This document shows positions 30,801 to 36,800 of a stretch of DNA of 64,000 bases, one piece after another. The notes beneath the pieces are model-generated. The model was not told the DNA's origin, searched no databases, and saw nothing but the letters and a program-made list of their open reading frames with translations. Each line of letters starts with the position of its first letter. Within the stretch, counting starts at the first letter, position 1. Position numbers and translations under genes: made by a program. The stretch covers positions 7,378,001 to 7,442,000 of the forward strand of contig NC_043025.1 in NCBI RefSeq assembly GCF_006345805.1, read 5' to 3'. This stretch comes from Octopus sinensis (Eukaryota).

Positions 30801-33800
30801 TAGTTCCTGTGTTACATGTCACTAGCCTCTATGTTACATGTCTTTAATGTCTGTGTTACATTTCTCTAGCTACTGTGTTACATGTCTCTAGCCCTTATGT
30901 TACATGTCACTAGCCTCTGTGTTACATGTCTTTAGTGTCTGTGTTACATGTCTCTAGCCCACCACAACCACTGGTCTGGTGCAACTAGTGTTACAAGCCC
31001 AGCAATTATGAGGATCCAGGATGTGGAGCGAAAGAGTTGGAGAGTGTTACCTGCCCTGGGTCCATTTGGGTGTTTGCAAGTGACCTTCTTCTTGAGGTAA
31101 TTCCATGACGTGCTAATTAAACCATAACCAGTATCCTAGCGGGTACTATTACTCCACATCAGTGTAGACCTGGAAACAATAATGATTTGTGCAGAGTCTG
31201 TCCCACTCTCTCGTCCTTCAAACTTATGTTGGTCTGATACAAGTGCCATGTGCCCAGTAGATATCGAGATGCAGGGTCCGTATAGAGTTACCTTCTCTTA
31301 AATGAGGAGCTAAAGCGCTGAAGGGTTTTATCTTGCCCTTGATCTGTTGGGGTGTCTTTGTGAGTGACCTTCTTTCAGAGGCACTACTACTACCACCACC
31401 ACCACAACCATCACTACTACCACCACCACAACTACTACTACTACCACCACCACAACCACTACTACCACCACCACCACTACTACTACCACCACCACCACAA
31501 CCACTACTACTACCACCACCACAACCACTACTACTACCACCACCACAACCACTTCTACTACCACCACCACAACCACTTCTACTACCACCACCACAACCAC
31601 TACTACCACCACCACCACAACCACTAATACTAACACCACCACCACAACACTACTACTACTACCACACCACCACTACTACTACCACCACCACCACCACACC
31701 ACTACTACTACCACCACCACAACCACTAATACTAACACCACCACCACAACCACTTCTACTACCACCACCACAACCACTTCTACTACCACCACCACAACCA
31801 CTACTACCACCACCACCACAACCACTAATACTAACACCACCACCACAACCACTACTACTACCACCACCACCACCACCACTACTACTACCACTGTTTTTTG
31901 TTTCCATTATACTTTCAGGAACCTTGCCGAGTTGATCTGCCGTTTCATAGAGGATTTCCGCCAACACGGAAGTCTTCGTGTCGAAGGAGAGGAAGGTAGC
32001 AACGTTCTGCCGAGCTGCGCCGATCTGTTTGTCTTCTACAAGAAGTGCATGGTGCAGTGTTCGCAACTAAGCACAGGCCAACCAATGCTTGACCTCACCA
32101 AAACATTCCAGAAGTATTTGAAGGAGTACGCTCACCGAGTTCTACTCAACAACCTACCAAAGTGAGTATGAGTGGAGTCTATTTCTTTATTACAGTTGCT
32201 TGGTCAGCCGTCTTTTACTATTTTACTTGTTTCAGTCATTTGACTGCAGCCATGCTGGAGCACCGCCTTTAGTCGAGCAAATCGACCCCGGGACTTATTC
32301 TTTGTAGTTCCATGCCCCGTAGCTTTTTTGTCAGACCTTAACACCTGTTTCTTTTCTTACTTTCAGAATGAGCTCCCAGTCTGCCAACCTCAGCTCAGCA
32401 TCGGGTTTGATCCAGAGTATTCTAAAGGAAGGAGAGGTGGCTAAGTTCACCGAGGAAGAGCAGTGCAGGGCATGCAGCATCCTCTGTACAGCCGAGTACT
32501 GTATGGAGACCACACAGCAGCTGGAGAGCAAACTGAAAGAGAAAGTTGACCCGGCGCTTGCTATTCACATTGATCTCAACGCAGAGCAGGATCTTTTCCA
32601 TAAGTGAGTATGAGTGGTGGTGGTAGTATGAGGTGATGTTATGAGAGTAGTGGTAGTGGTGGTGGTATGATGTGATGTTATGAGAGTAGTGGTAGTGGTG
32701 GTGGTGGTGGTATGATGTGATGTTATGAGAGTAGTGGTAGTGGTGGTGGTATGATGTGATGTTATGAGAGTGGTGGTGGTGGTGGTATGATGTGATGTTA
32801 TGAGAGTGGTGGTGGTGGTGGTGTGGTATGATGTGATGTTATGAGAGTAGTGGTAGTGGTGGTGGTGGTATGATGTGATGTTATGAGAGTGGTATGATGT
32901 GATGTTATGAGAGTGGTATGATGTGATATGAGAGTGGTGGTGGTGATGGTATGATGTGATGTTATGAGAGTAGTGTAGTGGTGGTGGTATGATGTGATGT
33001 TATGAGAGTGGTGGTGTGGTGGTGGTATGATGTGATTTTATGAGAGTAGTGGTAGTGGTGGTGGTGGTATGAGGTGATGTATGAGAGTAGTGGTAGTGGT
33101 GGTGGTGGTATGATGTGATGTTATGAGAGTGGTGGTGATGGTGGTATGAGGTGATATTATGCGAATGGTGATGGTGGTGGTATGATGTGATGTTATGAGA
33201 GTGGTGGTGGTGATGGTGGTATGATGTGATGTTATGAGAGTGGTGGTGGTAATGGTGGTATGATGTGATATGAGAGTGGTGGTATGATGTGATGTTATGA
33301 GAGTGGTGGTGGTGGTGGTATGATGTGATGTCATGAGAGTGATGGTAGTGGTGATGTCATGAGAGTGATGGTAGTGGTGATGTCATGAGAGTGGTGGTAG
33401 TGGTGGTATGATGTGATGTCATGAGAGTGGTGGTAGTGGTGATGGTATGATGTGATGTCATGAGAGTGGTGGTAGTGGTGGTATGATGTGATGTTATGAG
33501 AGTGGTGGTAGTTGTGATGGTATGATGTAATGTTATGAGAGTGGTGGTAGTGGTGGTATGATGTGATGTTATGAGAGTGGTGGTAGTGGTGATGGTATGA
33601 TGTAATGTTATGAGAGTGGTGGTATGGGAGTGGTGTTGGTGGTGATGGCAATGGGAAGTTATGGTGTTAGTAGTGGCAGTGATGTGATCTTATGAGGGTG
33701 GTGGTGGTGGTGGTGGTGGTGGTATGATGTGATGTTATGAGAGTAGTGGTAGTGGTGGTGGTATGATGTGATGTTATGAGAGTGGTGGTGATGGTATGAG

Positions 33801-36800
33801 GTGATATGCGAATGGTGATGGTGATGGTATGATGTGATGTTATGAGAGTGGTGGTGGTGGTGGTATGATGTGATGTTATGAGAGTGGTGGTGGTGATGGT
33901 GGTATGATGTGATGTTATGAGAGTGGTAGTGGTGGTGGTATGAGGTGATGTTATGAGAGTAGTGGTAGTGGTGGTGGTATGAGAGTGGTGGTGATGGTAT
34001 GAGGTGATATTATGCGAATGGTGATGGTGGTGGTATGATGTGATGTTATGAGAGTGGTGTGGTGGTGGTATGATGTGATGTTATGAGAGTGGTGGTGATG
34101 GTATGATGTGATGTTATGAGAGTGGTGGTAGTTGTGATGGTATGATGTGATGTTATGAGAGTGGTAGTGGTGGTGGTATGAGAGTGGTGGTGGTGTGGTG
34201 GTGGTGGTGTGGTGGTATGATGTGATATGAGAGTGGTGGTGATGGTATGAGGTGATATGCGAATGGTGATGGTGATGGTATGATGTAATGTTATGAGAGT
34301 GGTATGATGTGATATGAGAGTGGTGGTATGATGTGATGTTATGAGAGTGGTGTGGTGGTGGTGGTGGTATGATGTGATGTTATGAGAGTGGTGTGGTGGT
34401 GGTATGAGAGTGGTGGTGGTGGTATGAGAGTGGTGGTGATGGTATGAGGTGATATGCGAATGGTGATGGTGGTGGTATGATGTGATGTATGAGAGTGGTG
34501 GTGGTGGTGGTGGTGTATGATGTGATGTCATGAGAGTGGTGGTATGATGTGATGTATGAGAGTGGTATGATGTGATGTCATGAGAGTGGTGGTAGTGGTG
34601 GTGGTGGTATGATGTGATGTTATGAGAGTGGTGGTGGTGGTGTGGTGGTATGATGTGATGTATGAGAGTGGTATGATGTGATATGAGAGTGGTGGTGGTA
34701 ATGGTGGTATGATGTGATGTTATGAGAGTGGTATGATGTGATGTTATGAGAGTGGTGTGGTGGTGGTGGTGGTATGATGTGATGTATGAGAGTGGTGGTA
34801 TGATGTGATATGAGAGTGGTGGTATGGGAGTGGTGTTGGTGGTGATGGCAATGGGAAGTTATGGTGTTAGTAGTGGCAGTGATGTGATCTTATGAGGGTG
34901 GTGGTGGTGGTGGTGGTGTGGTATGATGTGATTTTATGAGAGTAGTGGTAGTGGTGGTGGTGGTATGAGAGTGGTGGTAGTGTTGGTAGTGGTGTCGGTT
35001 TTGAAGATAATGACAATGATGTTTATTTCTCTTACTCGTCTCTTTTGCCAGTGTCATCTCCAACTGCATACAGCTCCTGGTACAGGACCTCGATTCTGCC
35101 TGTGAACCTGCCCTGACAGCCATGAGCAAGGTAATATAATAGGGCTCTGCCATCACACATTACTTTAGACAGAAAAGGAACGGAAGCGGGTGAAAGCTAC
35201 AGTACTAAAGGGGACTGTTGCTAAATTCCTGAACTCATTTACGCGTAGGAGTGGCTGTGTGGTAAGTAGCTTGCTTACGAACCACATGGTTCCGGGTTCA
35301 GTCCCACTGCATGGCACCTTGGGCAAGTGTCTTCTACTATAGCCTCGGGCCGACCAAAGCCTTGTGAGTGGATTTGGTAGACGGAAACTGAAAGAAGCCC
35401 GTTGCATATATATATATATATATATATATGTGTGTGTTGTGTTTGTCCCCACCAACATCGCTTGACAACCGATGCTGGTGTGTTTATGTCCCCGTAACTC
35501 AGCATTTGGCAAAAGAGACCGATAGAATAAGTACTAGGATTACAAAGAATAAGTCCTGGGGTCGATTTGCTCGACTAAAGGCGGTGCTCCAGCATGGCCA
35601 CAGTCAAATGACTGAAACAAGTAAATGAGAATGAGTAATGAGTATTACACAATGTATTGTGTGTGTGTATGTACAGTCATGGCCAACGGTTTGGAACATA
35701 GGTCTGGAAATTTGAATTTTTATATTAAAACTCTTTTACTTGTTTCAGTCATTTGACTGTAGCCATGCTGGAGCACCGCCTTTAGTCGAGCAAATTGACC
35801 CCAGGACTTATTCTTTGTAAGCCTAGTACTTATTCTATCGGTCTCTTTTGCCGAACCGCTAAGTTACGGGGACGTAAACACACCAGCATCGGTTGTCAAG
35901 CGATGTTGGGGGGACAAATACACACATACACACATATATATATATATATATATATATATATATATACATATACCCATATACATATACATATACCCATATA
36001 CATATACATATATATATACACACACATATATATATATATATATATATATATAGTTAATCCAAACATGAAAACACAAAGAGAAAACACAACAACGCGAGGA
36101 CGTGGAACAAGTATAATATTATTGGACGCTAAGGAAAGAAGGAGGGTTTAATGTTTCGAGCAGAGCTCTTCATCAGAAACATAGGAAAAGAAGGGAAGAC
36201 GGAGGATAAAAAATCGCCAACGGTACACATGCGGTCACATATATATATATATATATATATATATATTATATATATATACATATATACGACAGGCTTCTTT
36301 CAGTTTCTGTCTACCAAATCCACTCGCAAGGCTTTGGTCAGGCCGGGGCTATAGTAGAAGACAGTTGCCCAAGGTGTCACACAGTGGGAATGAACCCTGA
36401 ACCATGTGGTTGGTAAGCAAGCTACTTACCACACAGCCACTCCTAAGGCCAAAGTTCTATTTAGTTTGCAATACGTTTTTACTTGGCCAAAAGTTTGGCG
36501 CATAGGTCTGTAAATTAGAATTTTTTATATTAAATTTGAAACTATTATTATTGTTCTATTAATCTAGATTTATATTTTCTTTGTGCTACACTTTTATTTC
36601 AGATGTCTTGGTCAACTGTTGAGACCGTGGGAGACCAGAGTGGCTATGTCACTGCTATTACGTCTCACCTGAAACAGAACCTGCCAATTATCCGGGACAA
36701 CCTTGCGTCATCTCGCAAGTACTTCACACAGTTTTGTGTAAAATTTGCTAAGTGAGTTACTCTTCATTTTGCTTTTTTGCTTTTCTTTTGTCTATTAACC

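What the first reader, a model, noticed from the sequence alone, without database searches (positions are those of the whole stretch)
31380..34985. Complementary (ACC)n and (GGT)n tracts hug VPS53 exons 12-13, a frame-closed 480-nt module
Seen: an ACC/ACT tract ends ~27 nt before exon 12 and a GGT/AGT tract starts ~10 nt after exon 13. They are mutually complementary in many registers (e.g. TACCACCACCACCACTAC vs GTAGTGGTGGTGGTGGTA). Introns 11 and 13 are both phase 2 and exons 12+13 total 480 nt, so a back-splice (CAT AA|G AAC) gives a stop-free circular reading frame and skipping keeps frame. Known: flanking complementarity drives back-splicing, and complementary simple repeats can structure introns in fish. 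Inference: microsatellite-driven circRNA, potentially with rolling-circle translation.
Basis: inference. Interest (0 to 1): 0.7.

Follow-up and report, generated by a model that had tools for sequence, protein, structure and literature searches.

The report
Complementary repeat arrays flank VPS53 exons
Two long simple-repeat arrays of complementary sequence sit beside two exons of the housekeeping gene VPS53 and should pair strongly in the RNA, which could allow a circular RNA or exon skipping, but no transcript evidence could be obtained and the reading-frame closure is inherited from ancestral exon structure.

Summary
A G-free (ACC/ACT)n minisatellite (31386-31891) ends 27 nt before a 243-nt VPS53 exon. 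A C-poor GGT/AGT minisatellite (32614-34988) starts 10 nt after the next, 237-nt exon. They are the only such arrays in the 64 kb. Predicted pairing gain is -420 kcal/mol, against a mean of -27 for random pairs of the same geometry. Staged folds put the acceptor and donor 33-47 and 7-8 nt from the closing helix. Both flanking introns are phase 2, 243+237 = 480, and the circular frame has no stop and four in-frame ATGs.

The 243+237 structure is identical in a distant relative that has no arrays, so frame closure is ancestral and not a circRNA adaptation. A related species (92.6% nt identity) also starts a GGT tract right after the exon-13 donor. A closer-protein relative (93% aa) has no ACC tract within 100 nt of exon 12. 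No RNA data were reachable, so back-splicing, skipping and translation are untested.

Best reading: lineage-specific repeat expansions that make a very strong exon-looping complementary pair. At most this yields a minor circRNA or skipped isoform and an ADAR substrate. It is a candidate member of a known mechanism, with moderate-low interest.

The parts
31386..31891 (+). Upstream minisatellite at the 3' end of VPS53 intron 11. It is an (ACC/ACT)n-based array with a 24-nt unit ACTACTACTACCACCACCACAACC in about 21 copies. It is G-free and AG-free, and it contains three TACTAAC branch-point-consensus motifs (31628, 31730, 31829).
   Evidence: Self-fold MFE is 0.0 kcal/mol. The first AG after 31379 is the exon-12 acceptor at 31917.
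31892..31918 (+). Polypyrimidine tract and acceptor AG of exon 12 (GTTTTTTGTTTCCATTATACTTTCAG). It has no yUnAy branch-point motif of its own.
31919..32161 (+). It is 243 nt and encodes (R)NLAELICRF...LLNNLPK. The upstream intron is phase 2.
   Evidence: The same 243-nt exon is present in the distant relative L001.
32162..32366 (+). Intron 12, 205 nt. It contains a fragment of about 96 nt (about 32210-32306) of a SINE-like repeat that has >=24 copies in both orientations across the window. These are competing complementary partners.
32367..32603 (+). It is 237 nt and encodes MSSQSANL...AEQDLFH(K/N). The downstream intron is phase 2.
   Evidence: The same 237-nt exon is present in L001.
32614..34988 (+). 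Downstream minisatellite that fills nearly all of intron 13 (32604-35051). Each unit has a variable (GGT/AGT)n block plus a TATGATGTGATGTTATGAGA spacer. The unit is about 36-39 nt, in about 64 copies at about 80% identity. It is C-poor.
   Evidence: The start of the tract is conserved in a related species.
30251..30367 (+). Upstream VPS53 exon (exon 11, 117 nt, ...ESQD-R). It would be the donor for the in-frame exon 11-14 skip.
35052..35130 (+). Downstream VPS53 exon (exon 14, (N)[26 protein letters not shown]). It would be the acceptor for the in-frame skip.

Best explanation
These are two lineage-specific minisatellites that grew from complementary trinucleotide microsatellites in the introns on either side of VPS53 exons 12-13. 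The upstream array is G-free and AG-free. That is the only orientation tolerated next to an acceptor, and it probably contains the branch point. The downstream array fills intron 13.

In the pre-mRNA the unstructured ACC arm is predicted to zip up with the GGU arm as soon as that arm emerges. This would form an imperfect duplex hundreds of base pairs long. The duplex loops out the 685-nt exon12-intron12-exon13 segment and places the exon-12 acceptor next to the exon-13 donor.

The likely outcome is a long intronic dsRNA that is mostly neutral. It would be unwound or hyper-edited by ADAR and helicases, or pre-empted by fast removal of intron 11. At most it would yield minor by-products: a 480-nt exon 12-13 circRNA and an in-frame exon 12-13-skipped mRNA. 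Linear VPS53 mRNA stays the main product.

What is shown: the arrays, their complementarity, the geometry and the frames. What is inferred: pairing in vivo, any back-splice or skip, and the neutral origin.
For: Thermodynamics: the ACC self-fold MFE is 0.0. The cofold is -496.5 kcal/mol with 363 intermolecular pairs, a gain of -420 against a mean of -27 (minimum -144) for 45 same-geometry controls. There are 465 ACC:GGU pairs in the 3.95-kb MFE fold. There are 73 pairs once only 91 nt of the GGT array exist, and the closing helix lies 33-47 nt and 7-8 nt from the splice sites.

Neutral or tolerance origin: the AG-free zone spans 31380-31916, and the only yUnAy motifs near the acceptor lie inside the array. 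A second G-free CT-rich array of about 1.3 kb abuts another VPS53 acceptor at about 26724. The two arrays have different unit architecture.

Frame closure is ancestral: exons of 243+237 nt occur in L001, which has no arrays. The arrays are lineage-specific: they are absent from L001, L006 and L008, while the start of the GGT tract is shared with a species at 92.6% nt identity.

Literature: reverse-complementary matches promote both back-splicing and skipping (PMC8330042). Octopus circRNAs are few (296 high-confidence) and low, which the authors attribute to ADAR (PMC9699675).
Against: No RNA evidence of any kind was obtained.

The close spacing of the only two such arrays in 64 kb is about a 1% event under random placement. 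The GGT tract also persists at the same donor in a species whose intron 12 is otherwise unrelated. Both points hint at non-independence or constraint, which a purely neutral account does not explain.

MFE predictions ignore proteins, kinetics and possible (GGU)n G-quadruplexes. Shuffled controls show that much of the energy is compositional. The organism is not identified by any tool, so the ADAR argument is conditional on its being a cephalopod.
Confidence: 0.55

Rival explanations
1. One reading: the complementary microsatellites are a selected device. It drives production of a 480-nt exon 12-13 circRNA whose stop-free circular frame is translated by rolling-circle translation.
For: The strong exon-looping complementarity abuts both splice sites. 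The circle is 480 nt, stop-free, and has in-frame ATGs at offsets 130, 166, 244 and 379. The start of the GGT tract is retained in a related species. Infinite-ORF circRNA translation is a described phenomenon (PMC6188482).
Against: Frame closure predates the arrays, because identical 243+237 exons occur in a relative that lacks them. Any in-frame coding exon block with length divisible by 3 is automatically stop-free. No IRES or transcript evidence exists. The arrays are absent in other relatives. Octopus circRNAs are generally rare and low (PMC9699675). A concatemer of an internal VPS53 segment has no obvious function.
Confidence: 0.05
2. The arrays have no RNA-level consequence. They are independent neutral expansions, and the duplex never forms in vivo. 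Reasons could be that intron 11 is spliced before the GGT array is transcribed, that the arms are coated by hnRNPs, or that the GGU arm folds into G-quadruplexes.
For: The ACC arm is transcribed at least 720 nt before its partner. The two arrays have different unit structure. Simple repeats are abundant in this window, with 360 TRF rows. Many competing SINE-derived complementary pairs exist.
Against: The predicted gain is about 11 SD beyond same-geometry controls. The ACC arm has no competing self-structure. Complementary matches as short as 13 nt work in vivo in C. elegans (PMC8330042).
Confidence: 0.3
3. The duplex acts as an ADAR-recruiting 'editing inducer element' that raises A-to-I editing in the enclosed VPS53 exons.
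For: Long intronic duplexes can induce editing at nearby sites (PMC3479170, listed). The GGU/AGU arm is rich in UAG triplets, which ADAR prefers (from my knowledge). Cephalopods edit heavily (PMC9699675).
Against: No editing data for VPS53 were obtained. The organism is unverified. The arrays are absent in other relatives whose exons are just as conserved.
Confidence: 0.05
4. Assembly artefact: the array lengths or positions are mis-assembled.
For: Minisatellites 0.5-2.4 kb long are hard to assemble. No independent confirmation of the ACC array was found.
Against: Four independent short-read assemblies of a related species end in the same GGT tract at the same donor. The arrays have an internally varied, non-collapsed unit structure.
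Confidence: 0.03

Closest known systems
Circularization driven by intron pairing through reverse-complementary matches. Examples are Alu pairs in mammals, DNAREP1 repeats at Drosophila laccase2, and the short matches at C. elegans zip-2 (PMC8330042, PMC4617980).
   Same: Complementary sequences lie in the two introns that flank an exon block, close to a canonical acceptor and donor. Cross-flank pairing is predicted to beat within-flank pairing. The same geometry is known to promote exon skipping as well.
   Different: The arms are simple-repeat minisatellites, which pair degenerately in any register, rather than inverted transposon copies or unique matches. The arms are very long (0.5 and 2.4 kb) and directly abut the splice signals. 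The upstream arm probably contains the branch point. No circRNA has been observed here.
Teleost (AC)m-(GT)n structured introns (Lin et al. 2016, PMC4691745).
   Same: Complementary simple repeats next to splice sites are predicted to form a stable long-range pre-mRNA helix. They are lineage-restricted and poorly conserved at individual loci.
   Different: In fish the repeats sit at the two ends of one intron (AC after the 5' splice site, GT before the 3' splice site). [quoted passage not shown] Here the repeats are trinucleotide-based and sit in different introns. Their polarity is opposite (G/T-rich after a donor, A/C-rich before an acceptor), and they loop out exons.
Infinite-ORF circRNAs with rolling-circle translation (reviewed in PMC6188482).
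   Same: The circle length is a multiple of 3. There is no in-frame stop, and in-frame AUGs are present.
   Different: These properties follow trivially from two symmetric coding exons, and they are ancestral to VPS53. No circle, IRES or peptide evidence exists.

Membership tests
RCM-flanked (intron-pairing) circRNA locus | Reverse-complementary sequence in the upstream and downstream flanking introns | tested here: met
   24-nt longest exact match. 251 downstream positions have >=12-mer complements. The cofold has 363 intermolecular pairs.
RCM-flanked (intron-pairing) circRNA locus | Cross-flank pairing is favoured over pairing within each flank | tested here: met
   In silico only. The ACC arm self MFE is 0.0. 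There are 465 cross pairs in the 3.95-kb MFE fold. Competing SINE pairs exist but are weaker.
RCM-flanked (intron-pairing) circRNA locus | Canonical acceptor upstream and donor downstream of the circularized block | tested here: met
   TTTCAG|G at 31918/31919 and AA|GTGAGT at 32603/32604.
RCM-flanked (intron-pairing) circRNA locus | Observed back-splice junction (RNA-seq reads, RNase R resistance) | not testable with these tools
   No transcriptome of this species or a close one could be reached. The protein searches returned no spliced close relatives.
Teleost-type (AC)m-(GT)n bridged intron | Complementary repeats at the opposite ends of the same intron | tested here: not met
   The arrays lie in introns 11 and 13. 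Neither intron has a complementary partner at its other end.
Infinite-ORF translatable circRNA | Circle length divisible by 3, no in-frame stop, in-frame AUG | tested here: met
   480 nt. There are 0 stops over three turns. ATGs lie at offsets 130, 166, 244 and 379. The same is true in L001, which has no arrays.
Infinite-ORF translatable circRNA | The circle exists and is engaged by ribosomes | not testable with these tools
   No RNA, ribosome-profiling or peptide data were available.
VPS53 (GARP/EARP subunit) gene | Sequence homology of the exons to VPS53 proteins, and collinear upstream and downstream VPS53 exons | tested here: met
   Hits named VPS53, at up to 61% identity over 99-100% of the query. 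At least 18 collinear exons were mapped. Pfam itself gave no hit for this segment.

The most novel reading that the evidence does not exclude
Octopod-type genomes may use complementary trinucleotide minisatellites across exons as a tunable exon-looping device. This would be the across-exon counterpart of teleost AC/GT intron bridging. At VPS53 it would control exon 12-13 circularization or in-frame skipping. Its output would be modulated by array length and by ADAR editing or temperature-dependent melting of the ACC:GGU duplex.
Probability: 0.06. Interest if true: 0.7.

Novelty: new member of a known kind. Interest (0 to 1): 0.3.

Why it matters
If the duplex forms and acts, this would be a clean natural example of a circRNA or exon-skipping switch built only from simple repeats. 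Because it pairs in any register and its length mutates easily, it would be a fast-evolving and possibly polymorphic splicing modifier. It sits in a gene of the GARP/EARP trafficking complex, in a lineage known for extreme RNA editing. It would also extend the teleost 'simple repeats as splicing structure' idea to invertebrates and to exon looping. As the evidence stands, it is one plausible candidate locus, not a demonstrated phenomenon.

Tried and rejected
(1) Pfam and PDB sequence searches of the 159-aa exon 12+13 peptide gave no hits. Gene identity rests on named homologues.

(2) I tried to recover the exon-12 side in the related species so as to test conservation of the ACC array. Exact look-ups of candidate exon-12 ORFs were not in the collection. 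A second homology search that included read-through found only relatives at <=93% identity. A search with the minus-strand ORF across exon 12 found nothing. Conservation of the ACC array therefore remains untested.

(3) I tried to identify the source organism and the related runs through the literature, using the SRR and GCA/FXBE accessions. There were no hits. Rfam and tRNA scans of the window were empty.

(4) A published VPS53 circRNA: none found.

(5) The octopus circRNA list: the held supplements of PMC9699675 give only the count of 296 and no locus list.

(6) Idea that the two arrays are inverted copies of one element or belong to a transposon: rejected. The unit architectures differ, conserved exons lie between them, and the 425 nt upstream of the ACC array is unique in the window.

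(7) Idea that the GGT array carries strong decoy donors: rejected. It has no GTGAGT, GTAAGT or GTATGT. It has only weak GGTATGA (60 copies) and AGGTGA (8 copies).

(8) A recent large higher-order duplication in the GGT array: not supported. Identity is about 80% at all lags, and the only duplicated piece is one 84-nt insert.
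Full report
OBSERVATION

- Exon '12' is 31919-32161 (243 nt; acceptor TTTCAG|G, donor AA|GTGAGT).
- Exon '13' is 32367-32603 (237 nt; acceptor TTTCAG|A, donor AA|GTGAGT).
- Together they are 480 nt. In the coding frame they read NLAELICRF...[12 protein letters not shown]...DLFH with no stop. Three turns of the circle contain 0 stops, and the junction codon is AAG.
- In-frame ATGs lie at circle offsets 130, 166, 244 and 379.
- Exon 11 ends at 30367 (...CAAGACAG|GT) and exon 14 begins at 35052. 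Both flanking introns are therefore phase 2, and an exon 11-14 join stays in frame.

The gene is VPS53. The 159-aa peptide finds proteins that their sources name VPS53, at up to 61% identity over 99-100% of its length. It also finds many single-exon fragments that end exactly at ...NLPK and ...DLFHK. Collinear VPS53 exons run along the + strand from 11502 to at least 44613. Nine coding exons were found upstream of exon '12'. That is consistent with the numbering 12-13 but does not prove it.

THE ARRAYS

Tandem Repeats Finder reports an array at 31386-31891. Its 24-nt unit is ACTACTACTACCACCACCACAACC, in 20.7 copies. It also reports an array at 32614-34988, with a unit of about 36-39 nt in about 64 copies. 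That unit is a variable (GGT/AGT)n block plus a TATGATGTGATGTTATGAGA spacer.

The upstream arm has 1 G in 511 nt. The downstream arm has 18 C in 2381 nt. The upstream arm ends 27 nt before exon 12. The downstream arm starts 10 nt after exon 13 and fills almost all of intron 13.

These are the only clusters of (ACC)n>=3 or (GGT)n>=3 in the 64 kb, apart from one 11-nt GGT run at 39236. By my own rough estimate, random placement of two such arrays would give this proximity and complementary orientation about 1% of the time. That estimate is post hoc.

The unit architectures differ, so the arms are not inverted copies of one element. The complementarity comes from the shared trinucleotide core. 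The longest exact reverse-complement match is 24 nt, and 251 downstream positions carry >=12-mer complements.

PREDICTED STRUCTURE

- The ACC arm cannot fold on itself (MFE 0.0). The first 510 nt of the GGT arm fold only weakly (-76.6 kcal/mol).
- Together they cofold at -496.5 kcal/mol with 363 intermolecular pairs, a gain of -420.
- Forty-five random pairs from the window with the same lengths and spacing gain a mean of -27 (SD 35, minimum -144).
- Mononucleotide shuffles of the GGT arm still gain about -300. Much of the effect is therefore compositional (C/A-rich against G/U-rich), and pairing is degenerate in register.
- In the MFE of the whole 31200-35150 segment, 465 pairs join the two arrays.
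- In staged folds that mimic transcription, 73 such pairs already form when only 91 nt of the GGT array exist. With 291-591 nt available, the closing helix lies 47-33 nt from the exon-12 acceptor and 8-7 nt from the exon-13 donor.

This is the exon-looping geometry that promotes back-splicing and exon skipping. In C. elegans zip-2, deleting either of two 13-nt complementary matches abolished both the circle and the skipped mRNA (PMC8330042).

SPLICE-SIGNAL CONTEXT

The exon-12 acceptor AG at 31917 is the first AG after 31379, so the whole array is an AG-exclusion zone. The only yUnAy branch-point motifs within 140 nt of the acceptor lie inside the array (CTAAT at 31825, CTAAC at 31831). The array contains three perfect TACTAAC motifs. 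Two inferences follow:
- The G-free orientation is the only one tolerable this close to an acceptor. The AGT units of the other orientation would create AGs.
- Pairing would sequester the probable branch point of intron 11.

A second long G-free array, CT-rich and spanning about 25372-26724, abuts another VPS53 acceptor in the same window. Expansions of AG-free repeats at the 3' ends of introns therefore look like a local habit of this genome, not a peculiarity of this exon pair.

COMPARISON WITH RELATIVES

The exact 79-aa exon-13 ORF is found on four short-read assemblies (Logan SRR11869384/90/91/94). They are 92.6% identical in DNA around exon 13. There the donor is followed by GTGAGTATGAGCGGTGGTGGTTGTGGTGGTGGTGGTAGTGGT, where the contigs stop. 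The GGT tract at this donor therefore predates the split of the two species, even though their intron 12 is otherwise unrelated (more than 1040 nt against 205 nt).

Three further relatives lack the arrays:
- A distant relative (L001; about 81% aa identity in exon 12 and 79% in exon 13) has exons of exactly 243 and 237 nt with the same boundaries, and no G- or C-depleted tracts near them.
- Another relative (L006, 84% aa) has a short intron 13 with no GGT tract.
- A 93%-identical exon 12 on an NCBI contig (L008, GCA_900175075.1) has no ACC tract in the 100 nt upstream.

Two conclusions follow. The 480-nt frame-closed module is ancestral VPS53 exon structure and cannot count as evidence for circRNA translation. 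The arrays themselves are lineage-specific. I could not obtain the exon-12 side of the close relative, so conservation of the ACC arm, and with it conservation of the pairing, is untested.

COMPETING PAIRINGS

Intron 12 carries a fragment of about 96 nt of a SINE-like repeat. This repeat has at least 24 copies in both orientations in the window. One copy in intron 10 is 97% complementary to it over 89 nt (28776-28864 against 32218-32306). Other inverted pairs link intron 10 with intron 14, and several lie within intron 14. The ACC/GGT pair is the strongest and the closest to the splice sites, but it is not the only complementary match.

LITERATURE

In teleosts, (AC)m-(GT)n repeats sit at the two ends of one intron and bridge it. 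They co-occur across introns and explicitly not across exons (PMC4691745).

Simple repeats have been listed among the features associated with a minority (6%) of human circRNAs in one model (cited in PMC11329666). Rolling-circle translation of infinite-ORF circles is a described concept (PMC6188482). No VPS53 circRNA paper was found.

In Octopus vulgaris, circRNAs are few (296 high-confidence across 18 tissues) and lowly expressed. The authors attribute this to ADAR melting intronic duplexes (PMC9699675). That the window is from an octopod is only my recollection of its abundant SINE (…TGACTGCAGCCATGCTGGAGCACCGCC…). No tool confirmed it.

VERDICT

The capacity for a very strong exon-looping duplex is well supported in silico.

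I think the most likely account (about 0.55) has three parts. The arrays are lineage-specific repeat expansions filtered by splice-signal constraints. Their pairing is mostly inconsequential or handled by ADAR and helicases. A 480-nt circRNA and an in-frame exon 12-13-skipped mRNA are at most minor by-products.

A selected circRNA with rolling-circle translation is unlikely (about 0.05), because the frame property is ancestral. No pairing at all in vivo is a serious rival (about 0.3).

The finding is a candidate new member of the known class of circRNA/skipping loci flanked by complementary sequences. It is distinguished by arms made of simple repeats. Interest is moderate-low until RNA data exist.

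Noticed in passing
window 25372-26724 (acceptor at about 26724): A CT-rich, G-depleted repeat array of about 1.3 kb (TTCC-type, with 150/375-nt higher-order periods) runs right up to the acceptor of another VPS53 exon (about 26725-26866). It acts as a giant polypyrimidine, AG-poor tract. This is the second case in this gene of a G-free array abutting an acceptor.
   Followed up: partly
window 32160-32175 and 32602-32617: The donors of exons 12 and 13 share an identical 16-mer, AA|GTGAGTATGAGTGG. Other donors in the gene look different (GTATAT, GTAATA, GTATTT). The related species has GTGAGTATGAGCGG at exon 13. This may reflect gene conversion or a shared seed for the GGT array.
   Followed up: partly
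window 30484-30975: A 22-nt-period tandem repeat (TTACATGTCTCTAGCCCCTGTG, about 22 copies) lies in intron 11. It ends in CCCACCACAACCACTGG, which is a solitary copy of the 13-mer signature (CACCACAACCACT) of the ACC array that begins about 420 nt downstream.
   Followed up: partly
window 32210-32306 and at least 24 other sites (for example 28776-28861, 35541-35625, 35730-35819, 50416-50511): A highly abundant SINE-like fragment of about 96 nt (…TGACTGCAGCCATGCTGGAGCACCGCC…) occurs in both orientations throughout the gene. It creates many inverted-repeat pairs between introns.
   Followed up: partly
window 38113-38425: A near-perfect hairpin with 146-nt arms, 98% complementarity and a 21-nt loop lies in a VPS53 intron. 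It is a candidate MITE or long dsRNA substrate.
   Followed up: no
window 41642-42754: A very homogeneous tandem repeat (123/248-nt period, 97-98% identity, about 9 copies). Each unit contains GTGAGTATGGAGG, a donor-like motif. It lies in the intron after the exon at about 41406-41474.
   Followed up: no
window 33627-33700 and 34827-34900: A non-repeat insert of about 84 nt (…GGCAATGGGAAGTTATGGTGTTAGTAGTGGCAGTGATGTGATC…) occurs twice inside the GGT array, about 1200 nt apart. This indicates one large internal duplication of the array.
   Followed up: partly
window 31079-31090 and 31363-31374: A direct repeat AGTGACCTTCTT brackets about 270 nt just upstream of the ACC array. It may be a target-site duplication from an insertion. 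The bracketed sequence is unique in the window.
   Followed up: partly
window 8892-10315, 12477-13974, 18323-19046, 27778-27919, 49250-49671: A family of 62-89-nt-period minisatellites shares the core GGTGCTTTTTACGTGCCACC…GGCCAG…GGCAACG. Its members occur in both orientations in several VPS53 introns, giving further potential long-range complementary pairs.
   Followed up: no
L002 1-1040 (related species, intron 12): Intron 12 of the related species is longer than 1040 nt. It contains an internal repeat of about 120 nt (…GATGCTCA.AAAGATTGG…CTTCTTCAG…) that is unrelated to the window's 205-nt intron 12. Intron content has turned over rapidly, although the GGT tract at the next donor is retained.
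   Followed up: no
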